Below are positions 5,366 to 30,558 of a stretch of 64,000 bases of DNA, one piece after another. The position numbers and the translations under genes are program-made. Below the pieces are notes generated by a model. That model searched no databases. It saw only the letters and a program-made list of their open reading frames with translations, and had not been told where the DNA came from. Positions within the stretch are counted from its first letter, which is position 1. Every line of letters begins with the position of its first letter. Origin of the DNA: Selaginella moellendorffii (taxonomy: Eukaryota > Plantae > Lycopodiophyta); the NCBI RefSeq assembly GCF_000143415.4, contig NW_003314405.1, positions 251,749 through 315,748 of the forward strand, given 5' to 3'.

Positions 5366-5394
5366 TCATTCTCTCAAGAACCCTAGGACAAGAG

Positions 5395-7398
5395 CTAGGG
5401 CTCTTGACTACTACAAATGCTGGCCAAGAACACATAGGCTCTGGGATTTCGTGGATCTAAGCGGAGGATCTGCCGTGCCGCGTCGATCGCCATGCCGAAA
5501 TCCTTGAATTTAATGCAGGATCCGAGAAGACACAGCCAATCCGAGCTATCGGCGAAGAATGGCATGCTCTCTATCAGATTCTTCGCAAACCCGAGGTATC
5601 CTGCGCGACCCAGGAGATCGATCAAGCAGCTATAGTGCTGCTTCGTGGCCGCCATTCCAAAATCCCTGCCCATCGACGCGAATTTCGCCCTCCCATCACT
5701 CAGTCCTCCTTGCTGGCTGCAAGCGATCAAGAGCGCCACGAAGCACAGCTCGTCGGGCGATTCGAGCGTGCTCATCTCCGAGAAGAGATCGATCACGCCG
5801 CGCCAATCGCCCTTGCGGCAGCAAGCGCCCATCATCCCACTCCATGGTCGCTTGAAGGCTACTGGCATCCTGTCAAAGAGATCCCTGGCGCGATCGAGGG
5901 TCTCGTCCGCCCTAGCAAGCGCAGCAATCACAGTGCTCCATGAGGTGGAGCTCCTTGCCGGGATCGCGTGAAAGAACTCCAAGCATTTTGAAATATCCCC
6001 AGTTAGGGTAATTGCAGCGAGCATCGTGTTTGTAGCAATAGCATCGTGCTCGGGCATCAAAACAAATATCGCTTTCGCCCTATCCACGTACCCGTGCATG
6101 GCATAACACTTCATTAGTGATGTCCATGTCACCACACCCTTGTTGGGTATAAGCTGGAAGAAACTCTCTGTTTTCTGCAATTGCCCATATACGGCAATTG
6201 CTGATAGCATTGAATTCCAGAAAATTTCATCCTTGTCTGAAAAAGAAGGGCAACTAAATAGTGTTTTGGATTTCTCTATCTGTCCACTTGGCGCGTACAG
6301 TCCGATCATTGTCGTCAAGAGCGCCATATCAAGCCTCGGGATTTTTTCGAGCAAATACTCGGCTTGGATCAAATCCCCGTGGCGAGATAGCGCAGTTAGC
6401 ATTGCGCTGGAAGAGATTAGATCCCAGCATGGCATATCGCAAAAGAAAATGTTCTTGGCCATGTCCATATTCCCGGCTTGCGAGTAGAGATTGATGATAC
6501 ACGTAAATGACACCAAGCTTCTCTCTTTCATCTCATCAAAGACTCTTTGTGCTTGATCGATCGATCCGTCTCCAGAATTTGTGGCAATCATCGTGTTCCA
6601 AGTGAGGAGATCTCGCTCGGGCATTCGATCAAACAGCTCTCTTGCATTGACAACGAGACCAGCTTCGCACAGACAGTGGAGTAGTGTGTTGTAGGAACTG
6701 AGCGTTCTCATGGGGATGAGATGGAAAATTTGTAGCGCTAGGTTGATATGATCTGGGCTAGAGCAAACTGCTCCCAGCACCGAATTCCAGCTGACCTGAT
6801 CCCTCTCAGGCATCTCTTGAAATACCTTAAAGCAATCTTGAATACGCCCTTCATGAGCATATACTGATAGCATTACGTTCCAAGTGATCAAATCCCTGAC
6901 TGGAATTCCATGAAATATAAAGATTGCATCAGAAACATTTCGGTTTTGAACGTAAGTTGTGAGAAGCGTGTTCCACGACACTAAAATTTTCTCTGGCATC
7001 TTATCAAACACTCGTTTTGCCTTGTCTACATCCCCAATGCAGGCATATGCTGCTAGTAATGAGTTCCAAGATACAGAATCCCACGCTGGCATTTTATCAA
7101 ACAGCTGATTAGCTTTAACAGCTTCATCAGCACGACCATACGATGTGAGCATTGAGTTATAGATTGCAATGTCTTTTTGCGGTATTTTCTCAAAGAAAAT
7201 TCTTGCTTGTTCAAGGTACCCTGATCGAGCATAAGCAGTAAGAACCATATTCCACAGCATCAAGCTGTGGTGTGGCATCTGATCGAACAAAGCTTTGGCC
7301 TCCTCCAGTTTCCTCTTGCTGGTCAACTCATGAAGCATCCTTTCGTTGATACTAGTTGACTCAAAAATTCTCATGGATTGGGAGAGCATGTAAGACAT
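5395..7398 (-). CDS. PLS-class PPR protein dominated by 31-aa S/SS motifs, E-type C-terminus, no DYW
   Basis: Tandem ~31-aa repeats (FDxMPxxDxVSWNxxLxAY), ending HYSCLIDLLGRAG...WLCLLGSC...AYVFLASI. First in-frame ATG is at 7398 (the ORF track starts at TTG 7434), so the start is uncertain. Confidence 0.9.
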   Translation of the reverse strand: MSYMLSQSMRIFESTSINERMLHELTSKRKLEEAKALFDQMPHHSLMLWNMVLTAYARSGYLEQARIFFEKIPQKDIAIYNSMLTSYGRADEAVKANQLFDKMPAWDSVSWNSLLAAYACIGDVDKAKRVFDKMPEKILVSWNTLLTTYVQNRNVSDAIFIFHGIPVRDLITWNVMLSVYAHEGRIQDCFKVFQEMPERDQVSWNSVLGAVCSSPDHINLALQIFHLIPMRTLSSYNTLLHCLCEAGLVVNARELFDRMPERDLLTWNTMIATNSGDGSIDQAQRVFDEMKERSLVSFTCIINLYSQAGNMDMAKNIFFCDMPCWDLISSSAMLTALSRHGDLIQAEYLLEKIPRLDMALLTTMIGLYAPSGQIEKSKTLFSCPSFSDKDEIFWNSMLSAIAVYGQLQKTESFFQLIPNKGVVTWTSLMKCYAMHGYVDRAKAIFVLMPEHDAIATNTMLAAITLTGDISKCLEFFHAIPARSSTSWSTVIAALARADETLDRARDLFDRMPVAFKRPWSGMMGACCRKGDWRGVIDLFSEMSTLESPDELCFVALLIACSQQGGLSDGRAKFASMGRDFGMAATKQHYSCLIDLLGRAGYLGFAKNLIESMPFFADSSDWLCLLGSCIKFKDFGMAIDAARQILRLDPRNPRAYVFLASICSSQEP

Positions 7399-8055
7399 TG
7401 TTTTATTATAAGAATTATTAACAGAACTAGTCAATCGATTTCCTTAAGATGGAGCTGCTAGAGAAGCATGGCCTGACTTGCACATCTTCTTTGAGAGAAA
7501 AACCTTTCAGAATAAATAGCCATTGGGTTGTCAGCATAAATCACTTACACCTCGTCAAACTTTCCTTCTGGTCCATCATATTATCATCGAGCAGAGGGAT
7601 TGTGCAAGAGTAGAAGTTACCAAAGTATGGTGGTCGTAGGAAGTGGTGATATTGATGGAAACTATTTGGCATGCTTGCAGCTGAAGAGATCACACTGCTG
7701 TGAGTCTGTTGTGCGGGGATGTGATAAGGTCTTGCCTGAGTGCTGAATGTCCCACTAGAAAGCTTCTGTAGTCGTGATGAATTGCTGTGAAGATCAAATC
7801 CATCACCTTCGTCAACATGACACCGTCGAAAGAAAAATATGGCCTCGCTGGTGGGAGCAACTGTGGTAGAGCAAGGCCTAGAGCTGGTCATAGCTGGAGG
7901 GGCATGTTGCTCCATGTCGAAGTAGAAAGAAACTGCTGATGCCTCACAAATGCCAGCTCGCAATGAAGAACAGGCGAAGGATGGATACGTTGCTTCCATT
8001 CGGCAGCTTTCTTCTGCCTGGTTGCAAGCTCTGTGAATGAGCATGCTCTGTGAAG

Positions 8056-9348: not shown

Positions 9349-11536
9349 ATGGAGGCAGTGATAGTCGAGCCGCCCCAGGATGCGACTTCACGTATCGTGT
9401 GCTTGCCAGAGCTAGGGAGAGTGCAGGAGCGAGTTGTGCTATGCAGCTTATCCGGACGTAAGAGATGTGCACCTCTATTCTGTACATCTCGAACTTCTCA
9501 AGTTACGCCGATCTCGACTCATGGATCACATTCGAGCATCTCTGGAGCTGTCAACATTCGGTACTCCACGAGCTCTGGAGCTCGCATTCACAAAGTAAGA
9601 GTGTGCATTGTACTTTTCAAAAAAATATCGGTGGTTCTTTTGCAGGATGAATGAAGAGCTGCGGGCTCTGGTAGGATCATCAGATTGCCGGGTATGTGGT
9701 AATCTCTCTTCTTGTCAGATGNNNNNNNNNNNNNNNNNNNNNNNNNNNNNNNNNNNNNNNNNNNNNNNNNNNNNNNNNNNNNNNNNNNNNNNNNNNNNNN
9801 NNNNNNNNNNNNNNNNNNNNNNNNNNNNNNNNNNNNNNNNNNNNNNNNNNNNNNNNNNNNNNNAAAGGACGAAAAGCTAACCCGTCCAAGTTCTCTCTAC
9901 CGTCTCAAAAATGCTAGCCCCCCGCAAAGTAGCAGTCTACCTTTTTATTACCACAAGGTACTTACTCTTTTGTTGAAATTTGTTATTCTGAAAGTGTGTG
10001 CACACAGGAGCGGCTGACTACGGCAGACACTTACCTAATCGTTGCGTCGAGACACCTAAATTATCACATGGATAGCGATTTTACAAGCGTTTTCACCACT
10101 CGGATCGACGCACTTGTGAGTATTGTATGCTTCTGATCTGCAAACAAGCTTGTAATGGGCGAACTAGTACAGGGCCTCGAGGAAGCTTGCCGCCAGATTG
10201 CCGATGTAGGGTCTGATGATTGCAGGACATTCGCAGTAGTTCCTGTTGGAGAGCTGCTGCGACAGAAAGTGGCCAATGGAGTGACTCAAGAGGTGAGTGG
10301 ACAGCTACACAGCGCCGCAGAGGACATAGAGGAAAACCCAGTCGATATAAATCCCGAGCCTGCGGACGAATCTGAGTCTGAAGATGAAGATGTGCCTGAA
10401 GACCCGGATGAGTCTGAAGACGAACAAGCGATGGAGTTATATGATGTTAGACCCGATGGTTTCCTTCCCCTAGGTACGTACAGTACATCAATTATAGCTA
10501 TATAACCTTATTTCTGTTTTCAGTCAATGGGAACCCTCAAGTACCCGAACCATTTACCTCTTGCAAGCCCGGACCTCCCAGGGACCCCTGCATAAGAGTG
10601 ATGGACCTCAAGGTTCAAATCTACCTCTCGTTTTGTTTGTTTATCTGAGTTTGTGGTTTGAGATTTAGTGGCTTTTGATCAGGAAAAGGACCTCAAGCTT
10701 GTTTGTAAAGTCGGCTCTTGCAAGTTCGTGATTAAAAACGGGGACATAAAAGAGTGGTTTGTAGACGGAAAGAATGACGCTATTGTAGTTCCTGTTGGAG
10801 GTCAGATACACAGAGGTAAAGCAAAGGGGTGTTTGGCATTTGACATGAGCTTTTCTCTTTTCAGAAATATGTATTGCTACTGGTTCCTTTACTGGCTTGG
10901 ATATCATGTAACTGTCTTTCCTCATTTCCTTTTAAAACTTTTAACTGACTTGTTTCTCAGCCCTTCAGGAGGACTGCCAGCACCTAAAATCATTGTTATT
11001 CAAGGCCCAAAATACTACAAAGACAGGGACATGGAAGCTGCTGAGTATCTTGGTCTCACTTACAGGTATGCCAGAGTGTGTAGCAAATTTGATACATTGT
11101 GCTTTGTCTATTACAGGAACGCTATAACACTTGCTTGCAAGGAGGGCGTTAAGCACATAGCGTTCCCAGCTATCTTGTGCAGATATGGCGGGTTTGTACC
11201 CACACCTTACCTATTGTATACTGAGTTCGCATTGTGTTTCAGGTTTCCTCTGGATAAAGTGGCAAGGATTGCTGTAGAAAGCGTACAAAAGGCACTCAAA
11301 ATTGCTAAAGTGTCCATTGAGGTAAGCTTCCCTGGATTAGACATGCCTTTGTTATTCTGTGTTCAAAATTGTAGGTTCACTTTGTCATAAAGGACGAACC
11401 CACCTGGAGACACTGGGTAGCTGCAACAAACCTCCTTGCATTTAAGGATTATGATCGTTATGTATCTTGTCGGTGCAACAGACCCCCCTTTCCAGTCACT
11501 TCTGAAGGCATTCCAACTTTTTTTAGCTGTGATTGA
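9349..11536 (+). pseudogene. PP2C-like/macrodomain fusion gene, copy 1 (8-bp deletion in exon 1; N gap at 9722-9863)
   Basis: Collinear with the intact copy at 18481. Reads GTGCTATGCAG versus GTGCTAATTTTCCATGCAG, which shifts the frame. Confidence 0.7.
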
Positions 11537-14211: not shown

Positions 14212-17178
14212 GTTAATGCAAAGCACATATGTTCTAGCACCCAAAGATGGAGTGAAGGCAATGTATAACCAGCATCAACTAAGATGGCATAGTTGTAAGG
14301 TTCATATTTCAAGTGCCAAAGGGTAGCCAAAGCCCTCAATAGCTGAGTGAAGCTTATGCACAATAAGAACATATGCACACAGCCTTTACTCATTTTGGCT
14401 GGACTTGGACTTGACCTTGGCTATCCTCTACTTGAGCATCAATCCAAAAATAATAATTGAGCTATTATGAAACCTCTTTATGATGCAATTTCATAAGGTT
14501 TCTCATGCCCTTAGATCTTACTATATTTGAAATATAGACACAAGAGCATACTTGTGTGGTTAACATACTAACATAGTCTTGCTCATGCTTTGGATGATAA
14601 AAAATTGGATTACCTTGTGCTCACACAACTACTACCAATTTTTTTAACTCTATGCTAACATATGTTACTTACTTGATTCTTATCATAAAACACATGCGAG
14701 TGTACTTTATCCTATTGACATTAAACATTTGGAAGTGCTTGGCATGTTGCTACAAAAAATTCATAAACTTCTGGGACACCCACAAACAAAAAAAAGTTTG
14801 TAATGAAGATCTTAAGAAAGAAAAATTAGAATTTTGTTGTGGGCATTATAGCAAATGTAGTTATAATTGACACATATACACTATACCAACTTGAAGTTTT
14901 AAAACTTTTTATTAATTTCTTATCATTTTTTAGCTATAAACATTTTTATATTTATTTTTTTAAATATTTTTTTATTTTTATAAAAAAAATTATACTTCAC
15001 ATTTTTGCAAACTTTAAACAATTTTAAAACTTCCACATCATATATATGATAATAATACAGACATAAGAATGAGCCAAGTAAAGGCGTGTGTCTCTCTTCA
15101 TACTTGCTTTGTAGAGCTTGACTTTGTATCTCCAGGACCCTGGCTCAAAAGAATTGCGACAAGGAGCATGAGAAAGTAGCGACCTCGATCACGCCTATTT
15201 CTGGACTGGTCAAAGTATTAAGTGTTGAGAACCGGTTTGTCTCTTGACTCGAGAGTTACCTGGTTAATTTGAGTTGCATGATATAAATATATGTGAAGAT
15301 CCACTTGCGCCTTACTGGGAGGATCACGTCCTTGGCATGTCCCCAAACGCTACCTTGGCTGGAGCAGACACTGCAAGGCCACAGCCATGCAGAGTATAAA
15401 ATCGATAGAAACTCTTTGAAAAAACTTAAGTAAAAAGCATCTTGCCTCTGGAGGAACTTGTCAAAGCAGCTTGAGAATTAGAAGAAAACTTTCCGGAATG
15501 AAGATTGACACTAAAATATCAAACTGAAACCAACGTTGGAAAAGCAAGAAAGATAAAGCAAGTGTTACCTGTATGAAGTCTAGATATATTGATTCGATAG
15601 AAAATCGACAATAAAATGATTTACAATTAGAAAATATACTAGATAGAGCTCAAAGTACCTCTAGTGTCAGTGTCTTTCTCTCACATTTTTCTTTTCTAAG
15701 GAAGAAGTTTTATCCTAGTCTGTTGTAATGCCTGAAATCCAATCCACAGATATTTGTTGATACTAGTTAAATCTAATTAACATGGTACGCTCTCACCACC
15801 ACCAGCTAGCACATATCGGACAGTATGCGTTTGGGAGCTCTTCCAGGTAGACGCTGCTATGAAATTATCTGAAAATCGAAAATCAGACGCATTCATCTCA
15901 GGCCGGACAAGGAAAGTCATGCAAGAAGAAGTGCACTGATCTAATAAGCAATGCTAAGAGAGGGGTATGATACCAGAAATTCATGGCCGTCCAAGGTATG
16001 ATCAAGATCAGCTACAAGCTCGATGAAATGCCGGTGATCCTGTCCCTGCCGCTCCCTACCCTAGCTAGATCCAAAGAGAAACGCTCCTTTGGGGGTCATG
16101 AGCAATCGGAAGAAACTGAAGTTCGCGAGTATGAAGTGTTCTTATGGTTTGCAGTTCCCTGTTCTTTGTTGTTTATCAAGCTTGCAGGGAGGCCTTGCAC
16201 ACGACGAGTTCTTGATCATGTTCCTGCATGACAATTTTTCCCCAGCTTAATTTTCATTGTGAAGACTTGGGGATGGAGCGGAACAGAGGGGGCCCTAATC
16301 CTTGTCAAGCAACAAGGCAAACACTGTTTCGAAGACCAAAAAAACGACAGGAATGCTTCTTCTTCGTTTTTTGTTTTGGAGGGGTTCTCCTCAAAGAGGA
16401 AATCCCCAAGAGAGGGCTGGGTAGCTGGTCTTCGATCCTGCTTGTTAGTAGTTTCACACAATCGAAAATCCTACATCTAAGTGTGGGGCAGCCGGGGGCT
16501 TCGATTCCCCGACTTCCTCTCGCTTTGGCCGCCTCAACGTACTGTACAAAACAGTAGCGACAGCCCAAAACGAATACTGAGTAGCCACGTTGAGAATGGG
16601 CACCCCACCATTTTGATGGTTTGAGAAAAACATAACGCCTCCTCCCACGCCGCCTCCTCCCAGCGCCGCCGCCAACAGCAAAACCAGCCCCCTCAAAACT
16701 TACCCTAAACACTAGCCTTTAGATATATTTACACAGCATCCTAACCGTCAGATTAGCTGATCCGATGGCTGTGAATTGTTTAAATCTAAGCTAACGAAAA
16801 ATGCATGGTTAAATAAAGAAACTCATTAAAGTAAATGCGATAGTAACTATTAACTCATAAAGGTTGGAGCAAAGTTAATTTTAAGGCGGATTTTTTTTTT
16901 TTACTTTTAATATTCCTTTTCTTTAACTTTTTAATTTCACCTAAAACACCATCTATTAAATATGGCCTCGCTGGTGGGAGCAACTGTGGTAGAGCAAGGC
17001 CTAGAGCTGGTCATAGCTGGAGGGGCATGTTGCTCCATGTCGAAGTAGAAAGAAACTGCTGATGCCTCACAAATGCCAGCTCGCAATGAAGAACAGGCGA
17101 AGGATGGATACGTTGCTTCCATTCGGCAGCTTTCTTCTGCCTGGTTGCAAGCTCTGTGAATGAGAATGCTCTGTGAAG

Positions 17179-18147
17179 TTACAAGATTTTCTTGATTTGT
17201 TTCATGAATTCTTTCGTCACTAGTGTGTACGTGTGCTCTGTTGGGTGAATTAAATCCCAGAAAACATAATCACTTGGATTCCTGCACAGCCCGCTCAAGG
17301 TATTTTTGTGTGATAGGCAATTGGGGCAACAACCCCCTCCATTCTGGAATCCAAACTTATTTGGGTTCTCCACGTACGATTTGATCAGTGAATAGCCGTC
17401 AACAAATGCACCTCTCATCCCTGGGAATTTCTTTGCCACCCCCAAAACAATCGCCCGAGCTTGCCAATTGAATTGTTCTACTAAATCGTTGATCTCTCTC
17501 ACACAATTTCCATCCGACGTGACAATAGGCACACAGCCTAACGGCCCAAGGCTAGAGTAGACAATCTTCCTGAATCCATATTTATAAAGTTGCTCCAAGC
17601 CTTTCTCCAATAACACTAGCATTGCTTCCAAGTCTACATTAGCAAGGTTTTGAAGATTTGCCGCAATGTCATTGCCACCCGAAGATATCACAACCACAAA
17701 GTCATTGAGATTCATCATGGGGATCTTGTTGGCTAGCTGTCCAAGTTGTTTTAGCTGCTCATTAAACGACACGACACCCCAGTCGGAGTGAGTAGAATCA
17801 AGCAGTCCACTACCGTCTGACGCAAAGTTGATGCTTAGTGGAAGTTGGCTCCCACCTTTCAAGCCCAAGAATGGTTTTGAAAAGGGCAAACCGATCACTT
17901 TGTTTATCAGATCTGGAATTAGAAACCCATCGCTACACCTTCCTGATGGCTGGTTATACCTTGTCTTCCCATACAGCACAAAATCACAACGAGAAACAGA
18001 GTTCTTCACGTACTTGTTAGTTCCAACATCAAAGATTGAGTCTCCCATGTAGATAGTCCGCAGCTGAGGAACTGACCTCCCATACACGCACGCGCAGAGA
18101 GCCAAGATCGCAAACAAGAACACTAAAATCTTCGACGACGTCTTCAT
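17179..18147 (-). CDS. GDSL esterase/lipase, copy 2
   Basis: 322-aa ORF with the same catalytic blocks; variant N-terminus MKTSSKILVFLF. Confidence 0.95.
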   Translation of the reverse strand: MKTSSKILVFLFAILALCACVYGRSVPQLRTIYMGDSIFDVGTNKYVKNSVSRCDFVLYGKTRYNQPSGRCSDGFLIPDLINKVIGLPFSKPFLGLKGGSQLPLSINFASDGSGLLDSTHSDWGVVSFNEQLKQLGQLANKIPMMNLNDFVVVISSGGNDIAANLQNLANVDLEAMLVLLEKGLEQLYKYGFRKIVYSSLGPLGCVPIVTSDGNCVREINDLVEQFNWQARAIVLGVAKKFPGMRGAFVDGYSLIKSYVENPNKFGFQNGGGCCPNCLSHKNTLSGLCRNPSDYVFWDLIHPTEHTYTLVTKEFMKQIKKIL

Positions 18148-18480
18148 CTCGCCAAAACCTTCACGAGAGAACCTATTACGGAAAGCCCGTTTATATAGAG
18201 AAACGAGAAAAAGGTGAACTCACCTTTACAGCTGGGCTTCATGCCTTTTTGGATTAGAAAGAGCCTTGAACAAGTTTTTGTTGCTCTTCTTCTTCTAGCT
18301 CGCCAGTAGATGCGATTCACAAGGATTTCTCCATGCCACTCGCATCATTGGCTAGAACAGGGAAATGGAGCTCTCCTTTGCGCAAAGGCGAAGGATTAAG
18401 CAAGCAAAGTCAACACTCGATAACCCATAAAAATAACTCTAACGTAAAAAGGCTATAGGGCTTAGGGCTGTGCTGTGGCG

Positions 18481-20673
18481 ATGGAGGCAGTGATAGTCGA
18501 GCCGCCCCAGGATGCGACTCCACGTATCGTGTGCTTGCCAGAGCTAGGGAGAGTGCAGGAGCGAGTTGTGCTAATTTTCCATGCAGCTTATCCGGACGTA
18601 AGAGATGTGCACCTCTATTCTGTACATCTCGAACTTCTCAAGTTACGCCGATCTCGACTCATGGATCACATTCGAGCATCTCTGGAGCTGTCAACATTCG
18701 GTACTCCACGAGCTCTGGAGCTCGCATTCACAAAGTAAGAGTATGTGCATTGTACTTTTCAAAAAAATATCGGTGGTTCTTTTGCAGGATGAATGAAGAG
18801 CTGCGGGCTCTGGTAGGATCATCAGATTGCCGGGTATGTGGTAATCTCTCTTCTTGTCAGATGGATTATTGCTGTTTCTGTGAATGTTTACTTTGGTTTT
18901 ATAGGATTGGTGTGCGCAAAACAGGTCCTTGGTGGTGGTGCTTGGAGACGCGCATGTGTATGTATTTGGCCAGGCCCTTGCGTTGGTGATACTGTGCCGA
19001 AGTGGGAAGGACGAAAAGCTAACCCGTCCAAGTTCTCTCTACCGTCTCAAAAATGCTAGCCCCCCGCAAAGTAGCAGTCTACCTTTTTATTACCACAAGG
19101 TACTTACTCTTTTGTTGAAATTTGTTATTCTGAAAGTGTGTGCACACAGGAGCGGCTGACTACGGCAGACACATACCTAATCGTTGCGTCGAGACACCTA
19201 AATTATCACATGGATAGCGATTTTACAAGCGTTTTCACCACTCGGATCGACGCACTTGTGAGTATTGTATGCTTCTGATCCGCAAACGAGATTGTAATGG
19301 GCGAACTAGTACAGGGCCTCGAGGAAGCTTGCCGCCAGATTGCCGATGTAGGGTCTGATGATTGCAGGACATTCGCAGTAGTTCCTGTTGGAGAGCTGCT
19401 GCGACAGAAAGTGGCCAATGGAGTGACTCAAGAGGTGAGTGGACAGCTACACAGCGCCGCAGAGGACATAGAGGAAAACCCAGTCGATATAAATCCCGAG
19501 CCTGCGGACGAATCTGAGTCTGAAGATGAAGATGTGCCTGAAGACCCGGATGAGTCTGAAGACGAACAAGCGACGGAGTTATATGATGTTAGACCCGATG
19601 GTTTCCTTCCCCTAGGTACGTACAGTACATCAATTATAGCTATATAACCTTGTTTCTGTTTTCAGTCAATGGGAACCCTCAAGTACCCGAACCATTTACC
19701 TCTTGCAAGCCCGGACCTCCCAGGGACCCCTGCATAAGAGTGATGGACCTCAAGGTTCAAATCTACCTCTCGTTTTGTTTGTTTATCCGAGTTTGTGGTT
19801 TGAGATTTAGTGGCTTTTGATCAGGAAAAGGACCTCAAGCTTGTTTGTAAAGTCGGCTCTTGCAAGTTCGTGATTAAAAACGGGGACATAAAAGAGTGGT
19901 TTGTAGACGGAAAGAATGACGCTATTGTAGTTCCTGTTGGAGGTCAGATACACAGAGGTAAAGCAAAGGGGTGTTTGGCATTTGACATGAGCTTTTCTCT
20001 TTTCAGAAATATGTATTGCTACTGGTTCCTTTACTGGCTTGGATATCATGTAACTGTCTTTCCTCATTTCCTTTTAAAACTTTTAACGGACTTGTTTCTC
20101 AGCCCTTCAGGAGGACTGCCAGCTCCTAAAATCATTGTTATTCAAGGCCCAAAATACTACAAAGACAGGGACATGGAAGCTGCTGAGTATCTTGGTCTCA
20201 CTTACAGGTATGCCAGAGTGTGTAGCAGATACATTGTGCTTTGTCTATTACAGGAACGCTATAACATTTGCTTGCAAGGAGGGCATTAAGCACATAGCGT
20301 TCCCAGCTATCTTGTGCAGATATGGCGGGTTTGTACTCACACCTTACCTCTTGTATACTGAGTTCGCATTGTGTTTCAGGTTTCCTCTGGATAAAGCGGC
20401 AAGGATTGCTGTAGAAAGCGTACAAAAGGCACTCAAAATTGCTAAAGTGTCCATTGAGGTAAGCTTCCCTGGATTAGACATGCCTTTGTTATTCTGTGTT
20501 CAAAATTGTAGGTTCACTTTGTCATAAAGGACGAACCCACCTGGAGAGACTGGGTAGCTGCAACAGACCTCCTTGCATTTAAGGATTATGATCGTTACGT
20601 ATCTTGTCGGTGCAACAGACCTCCCTTTCCAGTCACTTCTGAAGGCATTCCAACTTTTTTTAGCCGTGATTGA
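18481..20673 (+). CDS. Putative ~530-aa, ~12-exon protein: PP2C-like pseudophosphatase + acidic linker + degenerate macrodomain (Appr-1-p processing family); intact copy
   Basis: Manual splicing at GT-AG introns gives a continuous frame from ATG 18481 to TGA 20671-20673. C-terminal GDIKEWFVDGKNDAIV, LPAPKIIVIQGPKY, IAFPAILC and EVHFVI match plant macrodomain proteins. N-terminal LVVVLGDAHVYV..VILCRSGK, LTTADTYLIVAS and GSDDCRTFAVV match the order of PP2C motifs (less certain). Confidence 0.78.
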
Positions 20674-20769
20674 GAATATTCTAGGTCATTGTTGTCTTGC
20701 AAGTCAATATCTCACCTATTGAATATATTGAGAGACTGAGCTCAATATTGCTAAATTATAACTTAGGAT

Positions 20770-21467
20770 AGGTAAAGCAAAGGGGTGTTTGGCATTTGAC
20801 ATGCGCTTTTCTCTTTTCAGAAATATGTATTGCTACTGGTTTGTGGTTTGCTACTGGTTCCTTTTGTAACTGTCTTTCCTCATTTCCTTTTAAAACTTTT
20901 AACGGACTTGTTTCTCAGCCCTTCAGGAGGACTGCCAGCACCTAAAATCATTGTTATGCAAGGCCCAAAATTCTACAAAGACAGGGACACGGAAGCTGCT
21001 GAATATCTTGGTCTCACTTACAAGAGTGTGTAGCAAATTTGATACATTGTGCTTTGTCTATTACAGGAACGCTATAACACTTGCTTGCAAGGAGGGCGTT
21101 AAGCACATAGCGTTCCCAGCTATCTTGTGCGGCTATGGTGGGTTTGTACTCACACCTTACCTCTTGTATACTGAGTTCACATTGTGTTTCAGGTTTCCTC
21201 TGGATAAAGCGGCAAGGATTGCTGTAGAAAGCATACCAAAGGCACTCAAAAGTGCTAAAGTGTCCATTGAAGTAAGCTGCGGATTAGACATGCCTTTGTT
21301 ATTCTGTGTTCATAATTGTAGGTTCACTTTGTCATAAAGGACAAACCCACCTGGAGAGACTTGGTAGCTGTAACAAACTTCCTTGCATTTAAGGATTATG
21401 ATCGTTATGTATCTTGTCGGTGCAGCAGACCCCCCTTTCCAGTCACTTCTGAAGGCATTCCAACTTT
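20770..21467 (+). pseudogene. Partial tandem duplicate of the macrodomain 3' exons (unit 2 only)
   Basis: Repeats ~19956-20657 with deletions that remove splice donors (e.g. CTTACAAGAGTG versus CTTACAGGTATG). Confidence 0.85.
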
Positions 21468-22774
21468 GTTTATAGCATATTGGACATTGGTGATGAAAAA
21501 TTTATATTGTTAATTTGCACTTGCTAATGTTGAAAACCCTTGCAATATTAAGCTTAGTCTCTCAATATATTCAATAGGTGATAGATTATCAGATGTCGAC
21601 TTGGATATGGCGAGACAATGATGACCTATTCTCAATCACAGCTAGGATTTCTTTCTTTAGTGCCTTTTTGGTCTAAATGCATATATATTAATTAATTTCT
21701 TAACTAGCTTATGTGGAGATTGATAAAAAGTCTAACAATACTAACCTTTCTGCCATACAAAAAGAAAAAAAGAAAAAAATATTCAAAAAGTTTTACTAAC
21801 AGACAACTTTTGATACTATTTATGATATGTTCTCCCCCCTTTAAAAAGATTGACATTCTTGTTGATGCACACTTGAGACCATTGCCAAAGAAACAACTCT
21901 AGAAAAAAATTTATGATATTCATATTTTGTGAGAAATGTATTAACTTAAATAAGTTATATTATTGATAATCATTGCCAAATAGAATAGAATGGCATATAA
22001 TTATTAGCAATAATAATTAATTATAATATTTAATAAGGATAATTAACTATCCCAGATGATCAAGAACTAAAAGCTCAAAGAAGTTTATAACTAAATCCTA
22101 TATAATAACAATCATAAATTTCATACTGACTAATTTCAATGTTTAAAAAGAAATCATGATATAACCTATAATTTCCACCTTAGCAAATTCACAGGCTAAA
22201 ACTTCATAATGCAAAAGTTAATAAAGAGTATATCTATATTAATTTAAAAGCCATGCTCGACAAGTGATCACCAAACCATCTTTTATAAATTTTAACATGT
22301 AACACACTTTATAACAAGTGCAATGAGAATCATCAATAATCAATAATTTCAAACTCAAACCAACAAGGATCTAACAATTTAAGTATTAATCACTAATTCT
22401 TCATTTTACAAAACTAACTAATTAAGTCACTTTTCAAAGAAAAGCCAAAACTCAACCCTACTAAAAAATTTCATCTATAATATAGCTAACCCAACTTACC
22501 ACTCAATTTATTGAATGCCAGTATAATTGCTAACTAGCAAATGCATGAATATTAACAACATAAAGTTACAACCAAATCACCAATATTATCTTTGTCAAAA
22601 CTTGTGAAGCAAATTATCAATTTCCAATGAGGCTTAATTAATCACTAACTATCTGACTAATTATAGATCAAAAATTTATCTTTGGCATTATACTTATGAA
22701 GAAATATCTCATTTCACTCTAATATCAACTCTACCAATGTTAATGTCAAGGTTTTAATATTGACATAGGCATAC

Positions 22775-24156: not shown

Positions 24157-27069
24157 GTTAATGCAAAGCACATATGTCCTAGCACCCAAAGATGCAGTAA
24201 AGGCAATGTATAACTAGCATCAACTAAGATGGCATAGTTGTAAGGTTCATATTTCAAGTGCCAAGGGGTAGCCAAAGCCCTCAATAGCTGAGTGAAGCTT
24301 ATGCACAATAAGAAAATATGCACACAGCCTTTAATCATCTTGGCTGGACTTGGACTTGACCTTGGCTATCAAATTAATAAGCCTCTACTTGAGCATCAAT
24401 CCAAAAATAATAATTGAGCTATAATGAAACCTCTTTATGATGCAATTTCATAAGGTTTCTCATGCCCTTAGATCTTACTATATTTGAAACTAACATAGTC
24501 TTGCTCATGCTTTGGATGATAAAAAATTGGATTACCTTGTGCTCACACAACTACTACCATTTTTTAACTCTCTGCTATTACTTGATTCTTATCATAAAAC
24601 ACATGCAAGTGTACTTTATCCTAGTGCTTGGTATGTTGCTACAAAAAATTCATAAACTTCTGGGACACCCACAAACAAAAAAAGTTTGTAATGAAGAACT
24701 TAAGAAAGAAAAATTAGAATTTTGTTGTGGGCATTATAGCAAATGTAGTTATAATTGACACATATACACTATACCAACTTGAAGTTTTAAAACTTTTTAT
24801 TAATTTCTTATCATTTTTTAGCCATAAGCATTTTTATATTTATTTTTTATTAATATTTTTTTATTTTTATAAAAAAAATTTATACTTCACATTTTTGCAA
24901 ACTTTAAACAATTTTAAAACTTCCACATCATATATATGATAATAATACAGACATAAGAATGAGCCAAGTAAAGGCGTGTGTCTCTCTTCATACTTGCTTT
25001 GTAGAGCTTGACTTTGTATCTCCAGGACCCTGGCTCAAAAGAATTGCGACAAGGAGCATGAGAAAGTAGCGACCTCGATCATGCCTATTTCTGGACTGGT
25101 CAAAGTATTAAGTGTTGAGAACCGGTTTGTCTCTTGACTCGAGAGTTACCTGGTTAATTTGAGTTGCATGATATAAATATATGTGAAGATCCACTTGCGC
25201 CTTACTGGGAGGATCACGTCCTTGGCATGTCCCCAAACGCTACCTTGGCTGAAGCAGACACTGCAAGGCCACAGCCATGCAGAGTATAAGATCGATAGAA
25301 ACTCTTTGAAAAAACTTAAGTAAAAAGCATCTTGCCTCTGGAGGAACTTGTCAAAGCAGCTTGAGAATTAGAAGAAAACTTTCCGGAATGAAGATTGACA
25401 CTAAAATATCAAACTGAAACCAACGTTGGAAAAGCAAGAAAGATAAAGCAAGTGTTACCTGTATGAAGTCTAGATATATTGATTCGATAGAAAATCGACA
25501 ATAAAATGATTTACAATTAGAAAATATACTAGATAGAGCTCAAAGTACCTCTAGTGTCAGTGTCTTTCTCTCACATTTTTCTTTTCTAAGGAAGAAGTTT
25601 TATCCTAGTCTGTTGTAATGCCTGAAATCCAATCCACAGATATTTGTTGATACTAGTTAAATCTAATTAACATGGTACGCTCTCACCACCACCAGCTAGC
25701 ACATATCGGACAGTATGCGTTTGGGAGCTCTTCCAGGTAGACGCTGCTATGAAATTATCTGAAAATCGAAAATCAGACGCATTCATCTCAGGCCGGACAA
25801 GGAAAGTCATGCAAGAAGAAGTGCACTGATCTAATAAGCAATGCTAAGAGAGGGGTATGATACCAGAAATTCATGGCCGTCCAAGGTATGATCAAGATCA
25901 GCTACAAGCTCGATGAAATGCCGGTGATCCTGTCCCTGCCGCTCCCTACCCTAGCTAGATCCAAAGAGAAACGCTCCTTTGGGGGTCATGAGCAATCGGA
26001 AGAAACTGAAGTTCGCGAGTATGAAGTGTTCTTATGGTTTGCAGTTCCCTGTTCTTTGTTGTTTATCAAGCTTGCAGGGAGGCCTTGCACACGACGAGTT
26101 CTTGATCATGTTCCTGCATGACAATTTTTCCCCAGCTTAATTTTCATTGTGAAGACTTGGGGATGGAGCGGAACAGAGGGGGCCCTAATCCTTGTCAAGC
26201 AACAAGGCAAACACTGTTTCGAAGACCAAAAAAACGACAGGAATGCTTCTTCTTCGTTTTTTGTTTTGGAGGGGTTCTCCTCAAAGAGGAAATCCCCAAG
26301 AGAGGGCTGGGTAGCTGGTCTTCGATCCTGCTTGTTAGTAGTTTCACACAATCGAAAATCCTACATCTAAGTGTGGGGCAGCCGGGGGCTTCGATTCCCC
26401 GACTTCCTCTCGCTTTGGCCGCCTCAACGTACTGTACAAAACAGTAGCGACAGCCCAAAACGAAAACTGAGTAGCCACGTTGAGAATGGGCACCCCACCA
26501 TTTTGATGGTTTGAGAAAAACATAACGCCTCCTCCCACGCCGCCTCCTCCCAGCGCCGCCGCCAACAGCAAAACCAGCCCCCTCAAAACTTACCCTAAAC
26601 ACTAGCCTTTAGATATATTTACACAGCATCCTAACCGTCAGATTAGCTGATCCGATGGCTGTGAATTGTTTAAATCTAAGCTAACGAAAAATGCATGGTT
26701 AAATAAAGAAACTCATTAAAGTAAATGCGATAGTAACTATTAACTCATAAAGGTTGGAGCAAAGTTAATTTTAAGGCGGATTTTTTTTTTTTTACTTTTA
26801 ATATTCCTTTTCTTTAACTTTTTAATTTCACCTAAAACACCATCTATTAAATATGGCCTCGCTGGTGGGAGCAACTGTGGTAGAGCAAGGCCTAGAGCTG
26901 GTCATAGCTGGAGGGGCATGTTGCTCCATGTCGAAGTAGAAAGAAACTGCTGATGCCTCACAAATGCCAGCTCGCAATGAAGAACAGGCGAAGGATGGAT
27001 ACGTTGCTTCCATTCGGCAGCTTTCTTCTGCCTGGTTGCAAGCTCTGTGAATGAGAATGCTCTGTGAAG

Positions 27070-28362: not shown

Positions 28363-30558
28363 ATGGAGGCAGTGATAGTCGAGCCGCCCCAGGATGCGAC
28401 TCCATATCGTGTGCTTGCCAGAGCTAGGGAGAGTGCAGGAGCGAGTTGTGCTAATTTTCCATGCAGCTTATCCGGACGTAAGAGATGTGCACCTCTATTC
28501 TGTACATCTCGAACTTCTCAAGTTACGCCGATCTCGACTCATGGATCACATTCGAGCATCTCTGGAGCTGTCAACATTCGGTACTCCACGAGCTCTGGAG
28601 CTCGCATTCACAAAGTAAGAGTATGTGCATTGTACTTTTCAAAAAAATATCGGTGGTTCTTTTGCAGGATGAATGAAGAGCTGCGGGCTCTGGTAGGATC
28701 ATCAGATTGCCGGGTATGTGGTAATCTCTCTTCTTGTCAGATGGATTATTGCTGTTTCTGTGAATGTTTACTTTGGTTTTATAGGATTGGTGTGCGCAAA
28801 ACAGGTCCTTGGTGGTGGTGCTTGGAGACGCGCATGTGTATGTATTTGGCCAGGCCCTTGCGTTGGTGATACTGTGCCGAAGTGGGAAGGACGAAAAGCT
28901 AACCCGTCCAAGTTCTCTCTACCGTCTCAAAAATGCTAGCCCCCCGCAAAGTAGCAGTCTACCTTTTTATTACCACAAGGTACTTACTCTTTTGTTGAAA
29001 TTTGGTATTCTGAAAGTGTGTGCACACAGGAGCGGCTGACTACGGCAGACACTTACCTAATCGTTGCGTCGAGACACCTAAATTATCACATGGATAGCGA
29101 TTTTACAAGCGTTTTCTCCACTCGGATCGACGCACTTGTGAGTATTGTATGCTTCTGATCTGCAAACAAGCTTGTAATGGGCGAACTAGTACAGGGCCTC
29201 GAGGAAGCTTGGCGCCAGATTGCCGACGTAGGGTCTGATGATTGCAGGACATTCGCAGTAGTTCCTGTTGGAGAGCTGCTGCGACAGAAAGTGGCCAATG
29301 GAGTGACTCAAGAGGTGAGTGGACAGCTACACAGCACCGCAGAGGACATAGAGGAAAACCCAGTCAATATAAATCCCGAGCCTGCGGACGAATCTGAGTC
29401 TGAAGATGAAGATGTGCCTGAAGACCCGGATGAGTCTGAAGACGAACAAGCGATGGAGTTATATGATGTTAGACCCGATGGTTTCCTTCCCCTAGGTACG
29501 TACAGTACATCAATTATAGCTATATAACCTTATTTCTGTTTTCAGTCAATGGGAACCCTCAAGTACCCGAACCATTTACCTCTTGCAAGCCCGGACCTCC
29601 CAGGGACCCCTGCATAAGAGTGATGGACCTCAAGGTTCAAATCTACCTCTCATTTTGTTTGTTTATCTGAGTTTGTGGTTTGAGATTTAGTGGCTTTTGA
29701 TCAGGAAAAGGACCTCAAGCTTGTTTGTAAAGTCGGCTCTTGCAAGTTCGTGATTAAAAACGGGGACATAAAAGAGTGGTTTGTAGACGGAAAGAATGAC
29801 GCTATTGTAGTTCCTGTTGGAGGTCAGATACACAGAGGTAAAGCAAAGGGGTGTTTGGCATTTGACATGAGCTTTTCTCTTTTCAGAAATATGTATTGCT
29901 ACTGGTTTCTTTACTGGCTTGGATATCATGTAACTGTCTTTCCTCATTTCCTTTTAAAACTTTTAACTGACTTGTTTCTCAGCCCTTCAGGAGGACTGCC
30001 AGCACCTAAAATCATTGTTATTCAAGGCCCAAAATACTACAAAGACAGGGACATGGAAGCTGCTGAGTATCTTGGTCTCACTTACAGGTATGCCAGAGTG
30101 TGTAGCAAATTTGATACATTGTGCTTTGTCTATTACAGGAACGCTATAACACTTGCTTGCAAGGAGGGCGTTAAGCACATAGCGTTCCCAGCTATCTTGT
30201 GCGGATATGGCGGGTTTGTACTCACACCTTACCTCTTGTATACTGAGTTCGCATTGTGTTTCAGGTTTCCTCTGGATAAAGCGGCAAGGATTGCTGTAGA
30301 AAGCATACAAAAGGCACTCAAAATTGCTAAAGTGTCCATTGAGGTAAGCTTCCCTGGATTAGACATGCCTTTGTTATTCTGTGTTCAAAATTGTAGGTTC
30401 ACTTTGTCATAAAGGACGAACCCACCTGGAGAGACTGGGTAGCTGCAACAGACCTCCTTGCATTTAAGGATTATGATCGTTACATATCTTGTCGGTGCAA
30501 CAGACCTCCCTTTCCAGTCACTTCTGAAGGCATTCCAACTTTTTTTAGCTGTGATTGA
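28363..30558 (+). pseudogene. PP2C-like/macrodomain fusion gene, copy 3 (2-bp deletion in exon 1)
   Basis: Reads GACTCCATATCG versus GACTCCACGTATCG in copy 2; the remaining exons are collinear. Confidence 0.72.

What the first reader, a model, noticed from the sequence alone, without database searches (positions are those of the whole stretch)
18481..20673. Unusual fusion protein: PP2C-fold pseudophosphatase + acidic linker + degenerate macrodomain
Manual splicing gives an open ~530-aa protein invisible in the ORF track. The N-half follows PP2C motif order but lacks most metal ligands: VLIFHAAY (for GVFDGHGG), ALELAFTKMNEEL (for ALxxAFxxTDxxL), LVVVLGDAHVYVFGQALALVILCRSGKDEKLT (for ..LYVANxGDSRAVLCRxGxAxxLT), LTTADTYLIVASRHL (for LTxxDEFLILASDGL), and EEACRQIADVGSDDCRTFAVV (for GSxDNITVVVV). 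A D/E-rich linker and a plant-type macrodomain follow. I know of no described PP2C-macro architecture. Two apparently inactive enzyme folds in a locally amplified gene suggest a scaffold, sensor or decoy linking phospho- and ADP-ribose signalling (inference).
Basis: partly seen in the sequence, partly recalled or inferred. Interest (0 to 1): 0.82.

Follow-up and report, generated by a model that had tools for sequence, protein, structure and literature searches.

The report
Dead PP2C–macrodomain fusion gene, Selaginella
This is a real, spliced and transcribed spikemoss (Selaginella moellendorffii) gene whose protein joins a decayed PP2C-type phosphatase domain to a truncated macrodomain through an acidic linker; the domain combination is undescribed, is found only in this species' young, fast-turning-over gene family, and its function is untested.

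Summary
A 12-exon GT-AG gene at 18481-20673 (+) gives an open 529-codon frame. RNA reads confirm every junction, including a 43-nt mini-exon (20007-20049). One 1431-nt transcript contig runs from exon 1 into the macro exons.

- **C-terminal half:** it is a macrodomain by sequence (Pfam Macro, E 6e-12 to 1e-13). Only the last ~70 of 118 model positions match; the loop-1/helix-1 part is about 20 residues short.
- **N-terminal half:** it has no Pfam or PDB sequence hit. Four other tests all point to PP2C/PPM:
  - All top-50 Foldseek hits of a poor AF2 model are PP2Cs.
  - Protein-language-model features score 0.95 to PPM clusters.
  - The best Atlas shape hit is a SpoIIE cluster.
- **Catalytic residues:** the LASDG Asp is Arg and GDSR is lost, so phosphatase activity is unlikely.

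About 20 paralogs were found, all in S. moellendorffii and many broken. Tandem copies A and C in this window carry exon-1 frameshifts. The PP2C-like half is under purifying selection (ω 0.26-0.5). The macro pocket exons evolve almost neutrally.

The scan had flagged the same architecture on other DNA of this genome, without follow-up. Function is inferred only: a non-catalytic binding or decoy protein.

The parts
18481..18734 (+). Exon 1 (ATG at 18481). Start of the PP2C-like half; contains VLIFHAAY and ALELAFT.
   Evidence: Open frame. Joint 18734>18788 is seen in RNA, and the transcript contig starts at 18468. Copies A and C carry 8-nt and 2-nt deletions here.
18788..18833 (+). Exon 2 (MNEELRALVGSSDCR).
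   Evidence: Joints 18734>18788 and 18833>18905.
18905..19099 (+). Exon 3. PP2C-like strands 'SLVVVLGDAHVYVFGQALALVILCRSGKDEKLT', followed by the shortened flap region.
   Evidence: hhalign pairs it with GSTA...VANVGDSRAVLC..G...LS.DH. Joint to exon 4.
19150..19257 (+). Exon 4. 'LTTADTYLIVASRHL', the PP2C motif FLILASDGL with Asp replaced by Arg.
   Evidence: Joint 19257>19315 has 4+5 reads.
19315..19615 (+). Exon 5. Last PP2C-like motif (GSDDCRTFAVVPV, up to about 19410), then the acidic linker (19411-19615) in the same exon.
   Evidence: Joint 19615>19666 has 14+21 reads.
19666..19754 (+). Exon 6. Pro-rich end of the linker.
   Evidence: Joints. Evolves neutrally.
19825..19957 (+). Exon 7. 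Start of the macro-like half (FVIKNGDI...NDAIVVPVGGQIHR). It is the most conserved block of the family but is not matched by macro profiles.
   Evidence: Invariant columns. Profile matches begin only downstream of it.
20007..20049 (+). 43-nt mini-exon 7b (ICIATGSFTGLDI). It is missing from the original GenBank model P0004.
   Evidence: Joints 19957>20007 and 20049>20103 in all four runs. Present in all paralog loci.
20103..20207 (+). Exon 8 (PSGGLPAPKIIVIQGPKYY...). The macro Pfam match starts here.
   Evidence: Together with exon 9 it is the fastest-evolving part.
20254..20328 (+). Exon 9 (NAITFACKEGIKHIAFPAILCRYGG). Macro helix and loop 2.
   Evidence: Weak Pfam Macro hit on the exon alone, E 0.12. 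Strong in the full-length proxies.
20380..20458 (+). Exon 10 (FPLDKAARIAVESVQKALKIAKVSIE).
20512..20673 (+). Exon 11, with the stop codon at 20671-20673.
   Evidence: RNA depth ends near 20690.
21067..21513 (+). Duplicated alternative 3' cassette: E9' 21067-21141, E10' 21193-21271, E11' 21322-21513. It is open in frame and replaces exons 9-11 in some transcripts.
   Evidence: Joint 20207>21067 has 3+6 reads, against 8+6 for the E8>E9 joint. Open frames and intact splice sites; the donor of E8' is destroyed. The same cassette is present in L001.
9349..11536 (+). Tandem copy A. It has an 8-nt deletion in exon 1 and an assembly gap (N) in exon 3. RefSeq model P0002.
28363..30558 (+). Tandem copy C. 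It has a 2-nt deletion in exon 1.
17179..18147 (-). Head-to-head neighbour, a GDSL lipase gene. It belongs to the repeated unit, not to the fusion gene.
   Evidence: Pfam Lipase_GDSL, E 2e-23. Same arrangement in L001.

Best explanation
The locus is one member (copy B of three tandem copies) of a young gene family found only in Selaginella moellendorffii. The gene has 12 exons and encodes a 529-residue protein with three parts:
- a domain descended from a PP2C/PPM phosphatase, which has lost the motif-8 metal-binding Asp, the GDSR motif and most of the flap;
- a linker of about 70 residues that is roughly 35% Asp/Glu;
- a macrodomain that keeps its C-terminal two thirds but is about 20 residues short where loop 1 and helix 1 (the NAAN/GGG-D part of the ADP-ribose site) should be.

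Shown here: the splicing, the single transcript, the homology of both halves, the loss of key residues, the tandem and dispersed amplification with frequent gene death, and purifying selection on the PP2C-like half.

Inferred: the protein has neither phosphatase nor ADP-ribosyl-hydrolase activity and works by binding. The conserved pseudo-PP2C half would hold a protein partner. The fast-changing macro pocket, further varied by an alternative duplicated exon cassette, would be a variable recognition or decoy surface.
For: - **Splicing and transcript:** all junctions, a spanning contig and + strand RNA. The model is open over 530 codons.
- **Proxies:** the database protein P0004 differs from this copy at 2 residues apart from the missing mini-exon, so it serves as a by-reference proxy.
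- **Macro half:** Pfam E 1e-13 and 6e-12, model positions 47/51-118 only. PDB macrodomains by sequence, E down to 2.5e-10 and only from 'LPA.KII' onward. Foldseek hits are all macrodomains, probability 1.0.
- **PP2C half:** hhalign score 30.9, E 0.0011, against shuffles of mean 14.8 and maximum 24.2. All top-50 Foldseek hits are PP2Cs. ESM features 0.95 to PPM clusters, with 27 of 30 hits in one group of clusters that includes the PPM-named ones. The top Atlas shape hit is a SpoIIE cluster, TM 0.50.
- **Residue losses:** read.
- **Selection:** the PP2C-like half has ω 0.26-0.50, with a significant deficit of non-synonymous changes in all six paralog pairs (p 7e-7 to 6e-3). The linker is neutral. 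Exons 8+9 have pooled ω 0.91.
- **Open frames:** kept across dispersed paralogs at 12-16% divergence.
- **Family range:**
Against: - No Pfam or PDB sequence hit for the N-half, even at E 10.
- hhalign probability is only 21%.
- Both AF2 models are poor (pLDDT 40 and 50). Fold-level statements therefore rest on weak scores, with TM about 0.3 to PDB PP2Cs.
- Exon divergence equals intron divergence (K about 0.12-0.16 against 0.11-0.17), so overall constraint is weak.
- Many paralogs, including copies A and C of this window, are broken.
- Copy B's only private base is absent from the RNA.
- No binding, activity or phenotype data exist. The binding/decoy role is inference.
Confidence: 0.6

Rival explanations
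1. The family is a set of transcribed, decaying gene relics with no function. A chimeric gene arose once, spread by duplication, and is now eroding. The apparent constraint would be a residue of recent origin or of gene conversion.
For: - Frameshifts in exon 1 of copies A and C.
- Many truncated or scrambled paralog models.
- Exon K is about equal to intron K.
- Macro and linker ω are near 1.
- Both catalytic sites are degenerate.
- No relatives outside one species.
- Copy B's private base is not seen in RNA.
Against: - The PP2C-like half shows a significant deficit of non-synonymous changes in all six pairs.
- Several dispersed paralogs keep about 520-codon frames, and every exonic indel between them is in frame, at 12-16% divergence.
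- Splice sites and the 43-nt mini-exon are preserved in all loci.
- Transcripts are correctly spliced.
Confidence: 0.25
2. The N-half is not PP2C-derived. It is an orphan sequence whose motif order resembles PP2C by chance, fused to a macrodomain remnant.
For: - No Pfam or PDB sequence hit.
- BLAST and hhalign against the single neighbouring true PP2C find nothing.
- hhalign probability is 21%.
- The AF2 model has pLDDT 40, and TM to PP2C structures is about 0.3.
Against: - Four different methods converge on the same superfamily, which had been named in advance.
- The hhalign score lies above all 200 shuffles and the reversed control.
- The alignment is collinear over 148 columns and hits four PP2C signature motifs in order.
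- The predicted secondary-structure order follows the PPM order of strand, two helices, three strands, strands, two helices, strand (PPM topology from established knowledge).
Confidence: 0.12
3. The macro half is made mainly from a shorter transcript that starts inside the gene, around intron 4/exon 5 (for example from the ATG at 19297). The full fusion would then be a minor product.
For: - Raw-read depth is 0-3 over 18468-19286 but 9-29 from 19287 on.
- The E4>E5 joint has 4-5 reads against 14-21 for E5>E6.
- An in-frame ATG at 19297 opens into exon 5.
Against: - No cluster of read starts was reported (table 6).
- The spanning contig has uniform depth.
- The depth peak coincides with many mixed variants, meaning extra near-identical paralogs contribute there.
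- The N-half is the part under the strongest selection.
Confidence: 0.2

Closest known systems
PP2C/PPM phosphatases (Pfam PF00481, PF13672, PF07228), e.g. plant ABI1/HAB1 and human PPM1A
   Same: The order of signature motifs 3, 4/5, 8 and 11 is collinear with a PP2C profile. Foldseek, ESM-feature and Atlas shape hits are all PPM-type.
   Different: It falls below every family threshold. The motif-8 Asp is Arg, GDSR is ALAL, and DN is DC. The segment between 'LT.DH' and 'FLILASDG' is about 25 residues instead of about 65, so the flap and two strands are missing. It is almost certainly not a phosphatase.
PP2C-fold pseudophosphatases such as human TAB1 (own knowledge, not tested here)
   Same: A PPM fold that has lost metal ligands and is kept for binding rather than catalysis. 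Here the pseudo-PP2C half is the part under purifying selection.
   Different: There is no sequence relationship. TAB1 keeps a complete fold and has no macrodomain. A binding partner is known for TAB1 and unknown here.
MacroD/GDAP2/macroH2A-type macrodomains (Pfam PF01661)
   Same: The C-terminal two thirds ('LPA.KII..GP', helix, 'IAFPAI..G.GGFP', 'AA.IA...V') match at E 1e-13 to 2.5e-10. Fold hits have probability 1.0.
   Different: Model positions 1-46 are unmatched. The stretch between 'DAIV' and the 'C.TG' strand is about 20 residues short and lacks the NAAN Asn residues and the full Gly-rich/Asp loop. Loop 2 in this copy reads CRYGG. The pocket exons evolve at ω of about 0.9.
Other Selaginella macrodomain expansions noted by this scan (s1-405282, Gly-to-Glu MacroD pair)
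   Same: Same species, with lineage-specific amplification of macrodomains that have damaged ADP-ribose pockets.
   Different: That note describes stand-alone MacroD-type domains. Here the macrodomain is truncated and fused to a PP2C remnant. A relationship between the two families was not tested.

Membership tests
PP2C / PPM phosphatase (PF00481 clan) | Sequence match to the family profile at or above the curated threshold | tested here: not met
   No PF00481, PF13672 or PF07228 hit at E up to 10 for exons or for the proxies P0001, P0004 and P0007. No PDB PP2C by phmmer or hmmsearch.
PP2C / PPM phosphatase (PF00481 clan) | Remote homology: collinear profile-profile alignment across the signature motifs | tested here: met
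   hhalign of A3 against A5: score 30.9, E 0.0011, 148 columns. 200 column shuffles gave mean 14.8, sd 2.6, maximum 24.2; the reversed control scored 13.5. The HH probability is only 21%.
PP2C / PPM phosphatase (PF00481 clan) | PPM fold (central beta-sandwich flanked by helix pairs) | tested here: inconclusive
   The AF2 model has pLDDT 40. Even so, all top-50 Foldseek PDB hits are PP2Cs (best E 5e-3, TM about 0.3), and the top Atlas shape hit is a SpoIIE cluster at TM 0.50. ESM features score 0.95 to PPM clusters.
PP2C / PPM phosphatase (PF00481 clan) | Metal-binding acidic residues (human PPM1A D38, D60, D239, D282; numbering from established knowledge) | tested here: not met
   The LASDG Asp is Arg (Ala in two paralogs). 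The GDSR Asp is lost. Only the GS.DN Asp is kept, with Asn changed to Cys. The placement of the DGHGG motif is ambiguous.
Macro domain (PF01661) | Profile match above the gathering score | tested here: met
   51.6 and 45.9 bits against a cut-off of 22 on P0002 and P0004, which differ from the window copy at only a handful of residues in the macro exons (P0004 matches the window there but lacks the mini-exon and its junction residues). The window's exon 9 alone gives E 0.12.
Macro domain (PF01661) | Complete domain, including strands 1-2, loop 1 and helix 1 | tested here: not met
   Only model positions 47/51-118 of 118 align. The PDB profile search aligns only from profile position about 58 on. 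Foldseek aligns about 100 columns.
Macro domain (PF01661) | ADP-ribose site: NAAN Asn, Gly-rich loop 1 with catalytic Asp (MacroD type), and G-x-x-G loop 2 | tested here: not met
   The sequence reads 'DAIVVPVGGQIHRE-ICIATG' where canonical domains have 'DAIVNAAN..L..GGGVDGAIH....C.TG'. The canonical motif is from established knowledge and the alignment was made by eye. Loop 2 is 'CRYGGFP' here and 'CG.GGFP' in the paralogs. Binding itself cannot be tested with these tools.

The most novel reading that the evidence does not exclude
The family is a diversifying recognition or decoy module of lycophyte stress or immune signalling. A conserved pseudo-PP2C would dock onto a kinase, receptor or effector that normally engages PP2Cs. 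A hypervariable macro pocket would sense ADP-ribose-type marks or the effectors that write them. That pocket is varied in three ways: by tandem gene copies, by a mutually exclusive duplicated exon cassette (E9-E11 or E9'-E11'), and by near-neutral or positive evolution. One paralog shares a bidirectional promoter region with PARG.
Probability: 0.12. Interest if true: 0.75.

Novelty: new variant of a known kind. Interest (0 to 1): 0.48.

Why it matters
Pseudo-phosphatases and macrodomains are each well known. A protein joining the two has not been described in the papers I could search. None exists outside this family in the 5.8-billion-protein collection, as far as these searches reach.

If the protein is functional, it would physically link a phospho-signalling fold to an ADP-ribose-signalling fold, with both used for binding rather than catalysis. 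It would also be a compact example of how dead enzymes are recycled.

It is also a clear case of birth-and-death evolution: tandem triplication, dispersed copies limited to the transcription unit, frameshifted members, and an alternative duplicated exon cassette.

Its restriction to one species, its weak overall constraint and the absence of any functional data limit its importance for now.

Tried and rejected
- **Pfam on each exon by reference:** only exon 9 gave a weak Macro hit.
- **Sequence searches of the N-half against PDB** (phmmer and hmmsearch): nothing relevant.
- **BLASTP and hhalign of the N-half against the single true PP2C next to paralog P0007:** no similarity. I therefore reject a recent origin from that neighbour.
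- **AF2 with the shallow paralog alignments:** low-confidence models. I used them only for family-level Foldseek and Atlas hits, not for residue geometry.
- **More divergent family members (P0137, P0138)** as bridges to PP2C: they are degraded fragments and give no bridge.
- **Transposon capture (Pack-MULE or Helitron):** homology between dispersed paralogs starts 2-20 nt before the ATG and ends near the stop, with no shared terminal sequences. I found no support for it.
- **Retroposition of spliced mRNA:** rejected, because all introns are retained.
- **Conserved neighbour genes:** rejected. The partners differ by locus: GDSL lipase, true PP2C, isochorismatase-family gene, PARG.
- **Copy-specific expression:** only one base is private to copy B, and it is not seen in RNA.
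Full report
**1. What is at the coordinates**

The window is eukaryotic DNA with short introns. Database names identify it as Selaginella moellendorffii.

From the ATG at 18481, a chain of GT-AG introns gives an open frame. RNA evidence then corrected my first model. Between exons 7 and 8 there is a 43-nt mini-exon (20007-20049), and exon 8 starts at 20103. The final model has 12 exons:
- 18481-18734
- 18788-18833
- 18905-19099
- 19150-19257
- 19315-19615
- 19666-19754
- 19825-19957
- 20007-20049
- 20103-20207
- 20254-20328
- 20380-20458
- 20512-20673

These sum to 1590 nt, or 530 codons with the stop.

**2. RNA evidence**

Two raw stranded RNA-seq runs, and contigs of two older runs that the tool lists only as probable RNA, were laid on 18000-21500.
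- Every junction of the model is seen, with GT..AG ends.
- First mates lie on the minus strand, so the RNA is from the plus strand.
- One 1431-nt contig runs from 18468 (13 nt before the ATG, preceded by adapter sequence) through all junctions to exon 10.
- The boundary between the PP2C-like part and the linker lies inside exon 5. Both flanking junctions are read: E4>E5 with 4+5 reads and E5>E6 with 14+21 reads.

'Two halves transcribed separately' is therefore refuted as the only mode.

Caveats:
- Raw depth over exons 1-4 is 0-3, against 9-29 from exon 5 on. This could reflect an internal start. It could also reflect extra near-identical paralogs contributing reads, because many mixed variants are seen there.
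- The only base private to this copy (19173 A) reads T in all 6 raw reads and in both contigs.
- The spanning contig matches none of copies A, C or L001 exactly.

Expression is therefore proven for copies about 99% identical to this one, not for copy B itself.

An alternative junction from exon 8 (20207) to 21067 has 3+6 reads, against 8+6 for the E8>E9 junction. It leads into a duplicated cassette, E9' (21067-21141), E10' (21193-21271) and E11' (21322-21513). The cassette is open and has intact splice sites, whereas the duplicated exon 8' has lost its donor. The gene can therefore end in either of two versions of the C-terminal part of the macrodomain.

**3. How the joined protein was handled**

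Exons were searched by reference.

An exhaustive search with exon 1 returned two Selaginella proteins, and a word-based search returned the rest of the family.
- P0004 (SELMODRAFT_419711, 512 aa) differs from this copy's exon translations at 2 residues and lacks only the mini-exon.
- P0002 (LOC9646500) is the RefSeq model of tandem copy A and contains the mini-exon.

These two proteins served as by-reference proxies.

**4. The macro half**

- Pfam Macro matches P0002 at E 1.1e-13 and P0004 at 6.4e-12. Only model positions 47/51-118 of 118 align.
- Sequence searches against PDB find GDAP2, MacroD-type, YmdB, macroH2A and PARP14 macrodomains. With the family profile the E-value goes down to 2.5e-10. 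The match always begins at 'LPA.KII..GP'.
- A low-confidence AF2 model (pLDDT 50) hits only macrodomains in Foldseek, at probability 1.0 over about 100 columns.
- Upstream of the matched part the family reads 'FVIKNGDI....NDAIVVPVGGQIHRE-ICIATG'. Compared by eye with the canonical 'GDIT...DAIVNAAN..L..GGGVDGAIHRAAG......C.TG' (established knowledge), about 20 residues are missing. The missing stretch includes the Asn residues, most of the Gly-rich/Asp loop and helix 1.
- This N-terminal block is nevertheless the most conserved block of the family.
- Loop 2 is 'CRYGGFP' in this copy and 'CG.GGFP' in the paralogs.

Conclusion: this is a macro-derived domain that is unlikely to hydrolyse ADP-ribose. 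Whether it binds ADP-ribose is doubtful and untested.

**5. The PP2C-like half**

Ordinary sequence methods find nothing: Pfam at E up to 10, and PDB by phmmer and by family profile.

(a) Protein-language-model features of P0004:1-240. The nearest Atlas clusters score 0.95, share 171-180 of 256 features, and are named PPM-type phosphatase. 27 of the 30 hits fall in one group of clusters that includes the PPM-named ones, and further rows carry SpoIIE/PP2C_2/PP2C.

(b) AF2 model with the 9-paralog alignment. The model is poor (pLDDT 40.5). Its secondary-structure order is strand, two helices, three strands, two strands, two helices, strand, which is the PPM order. All of the top 50 Foldseek PDB hits are PP2Cs (ABI1, HAB1, PP2CA, TAP38, PPM1A/B), with best E 5e-3 and probability up to 0.82.

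(c) Atlas shape search. The best hit is a response-regulator-SpoIIE cluster, TM 0.50 over 185 residues.

(d) Profile-profile alignment. Paralog locus L002 happens to carry a true intronless PP2C gene (P0017) 600 nt downstream of the fusion paralog. I used it to collect plant PP2Cs and built a 36-sequence alignment. hhalign of the N-half profile against it gives score 30.9, E 0.0011 and 148 columns, pairing N-half 74-235 with PP2C 117-300. Two hundred column shuffles gave mean 14.8, sd 2.6 and maximum 24.2; the reversed profile gave 13.5.

| N-half | PP2C consensus |
|---|---|
| ALELAFTKMNEEL | aL..a...iD..F |
| SLVVVLGDAHVYVFGQALALVILCRSGK..DEKLT | STAvvAvlv...llVANVGDSRAvlC..g...a..LS.DH |
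| LTTADTYLIVASRHL | i...deFLvLASDGi |
| ACRQIADVGSDDCRTFAVVPVG | A..i..eA..rGS.DN.s.vVV |

From this alignment:
- The LASDG Asp (D239 of human PPM1A, numbering from established knowledge) is Arg. It is Ala in two paralogs.
- GDSR is ALAL.
- The GS.DN Asp is kept, but Asn is Cys.
- The segment that forms the flap and two strands is about 25 residues instead of about 65.

The first 73 residues cannot be placed with confidence. The first metal-binding Asp is therefore undecided.

I put the probability that this half descends from a PPM phosphatase at about 0.85, and the probability that it is catalytically dead at about 0.8.

**6. Linker**

The piece 19411-19614 has 24 D/E and 1 K/R in 68 residues. 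It evolves neutrally, with in-frame indels.

**7. Family and genome context**

In-window arrangement:
- The gene sits head-to-head with a GDSL lipase gene (17179-18147, minus strand).
- Both lie in a unit of about 9-10 kb that is present three times in tandem.
- Copy A (9349-11536) has an 8-nt deletion in exon 1 and an assembly gap in exon 3.
- Copy C (28363-30558) has a 2-nt deletion in exon 1.
- Only copy B keeps exon 1 open.
- L001, on another scaffold, is 98.7% identical to copy B. It has the same neighbour gene and the same E9'-E11' cassette, so it is probably the other haplotype.

Dispersed family:
- About 20 further loci exist, all in S. moellendorffii. Several have about 510-535-residue open models (P0007, P0008, P0009). 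Many are truncated or scrambled.
- Nothing from any other organism was found. This holds for the exhaustive exon-1 search of 1.84 billion representatives and for the two word-based searches.
- Homology between dispersed paralogs is confined to the transcription unit. It starts 2-20 nt before the ATG, after a short TTAGGGCT-like motif, and ends at or just before the stop. All introns are retained and no flanking termini are shared.
- Neighbour genes differ by locus: a true PP2C (L002), an isochorismatase-family gene (L003), and a PARG gene head-to-head, 81 nt from the exon-1 ATG (L004).

**8. Selection**

I made Nei-Gojobori counts exon by exon and summed them, without joining any sequence.

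| Region | ω | Note |
|---|---|---|
| PP2C-like half | 0.26-0.50 | Significant deficit of non-synonymous changes in all six pairs (p 7e-7 to 6e-3; pairs are not independent) |
| Linker | 0.6-1.3 | Neutral |
| Macro half | 0.5-1.0 | Weak or borderline constraint |
| Exons 8+9 (pocket strand and loop 2) | 0.91 pooled | Fastest part, dN 0.12-0.18 |

These figures come, with dS of 0.15-0.27.

Intron divergence (K 0.11-0.17) is about the same as overall exon divergence (0.12-0.16), so constraint is weak overall. Even so, the intact paralogs keep their frames, their splice sites and the mini-exon. This is a birth-and-death pattern, with selection mainly on the pseudo-PP2C half.

**9. Interpretation**

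Shown:
- a real fused gene and transcript;
- homology of both halves;
- loss of catalytic signatures;
- amplification and turnover;
- region-specific constraint.

Inferred: the protein is non-catalytic and works by binding. The conserved pseudo-PP2C would be the anchor, and the variable macro pocket would be a recognition or decoy surface. That pocket is further diversified by the alternative cassette and by copy number.

The main rival is a functionless, decaying chimera (0.25). Lesser rivals are a chance PP2C resemblance (0.12) and a predominant short macro-only transcript (0.2, compatible with the main reading).

**10. Novelty**

The gene itself is already in GenBank, RefSeq and UniProt as 'hypothetical' or 'Macro domain-containing' protein.

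No paper in the searchable library links PP2C and macrodomains in one protein.

First readers of this scan flagged the same architecture at other loci of this genome (s1-392255, s1-380555, s1-405350, s1-399040). None of those notes had been followed up.

I rate it a new variant of known kinds, of moderate interest.

Noticed in passing
window 21067-21513 (with 20760-21060): Partial tandem duplication of exons 7b-11. Exon 8' has lost its donor, but E9'-E11' are open. They are spliced to exon 8 in 3+6 RNA reads, giving a mutually exclusive alternative C-terminal macro cassette. The same structure is present in L001:8206-9086.
   Followed up: partly
window 18461-18480; L002:~4999; L003:~4984; L004:~4806: Homology among dispersed paralogs is limited to the transcription unit, from a few bases before the ATG to about the stop. 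All introns are kept and no flanks are shared. A short TTAGGGCT-like (telomere-repeat/telo-box-like) motif lies just upstream in several copies. The duplication mechanism is unexplained; gene conversion or copying of unspliced transcripts are possibilities.
   Followed up: partly
L004:2791-4740 (-) and 4821 (+): Paralog P0009 is head-to-head with a PARG (poly-ADP-ribose glycohydrolase) gene, only 81 nt from the exon-1 ATG. Its annotated model starts at the internal Met, but exon 1 is present upstream at 90% identity.
   Followed up: partly
L002:7760-8701 (+): A true, intronless PP2C gene (P0017, SELMODRAFT_405953) lies 600 nt downstream of paralog P0007. A degraded family member (P0137, SELMODRAFT_405956) is on the same scaffold. 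P0017 shows no detectable direct similarity to the pseudo-PP2C half.
   Followed up: yes
L003:2348-3329 (+): An isochorismatase-family gene (the family includes nicotinamidases) lies upstream of paralog P0008, whose ATG is mutated to ACG.
   Followed up: no
window 18353-18395: A 43-nt piece in the intergenic promoter region is matched by RNA reads of the opposite strand that run on into unrelated sequence on both sides (5-8 reads per run). It is presumably a fragment shared with a transcript from elsewhere.
   Followed up: no
window 9732-9864 (about): A run of N (assembly gap) inside exon 3 and intron 2 of tandem copy A. RefSeq model P0002 also borrows a last exon about 4 kb downstream, at 15847-15936, and that exon is repeated at 25737-25826 and 36782-36871.
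   Followed up: partly
window 2525-7431 (-): Two large intronless PPR-repeat ORFs (945 and 678 aa).
   Followed up: no
window 49480-53025 (-): Ty3/gypsy-type LTR retrotransposon pol region (reverse transcriptase, RNase H, integrase) with long open frames.
   Followed up: no
window 19435-19437: A strong alternative donor (CAAGAG|GTGAGT) lies inside exon 5. Some paralog models (P0001, P0011) skip the acidic linker. No RNA read in the four runs used this donor.
   Followed up: partly
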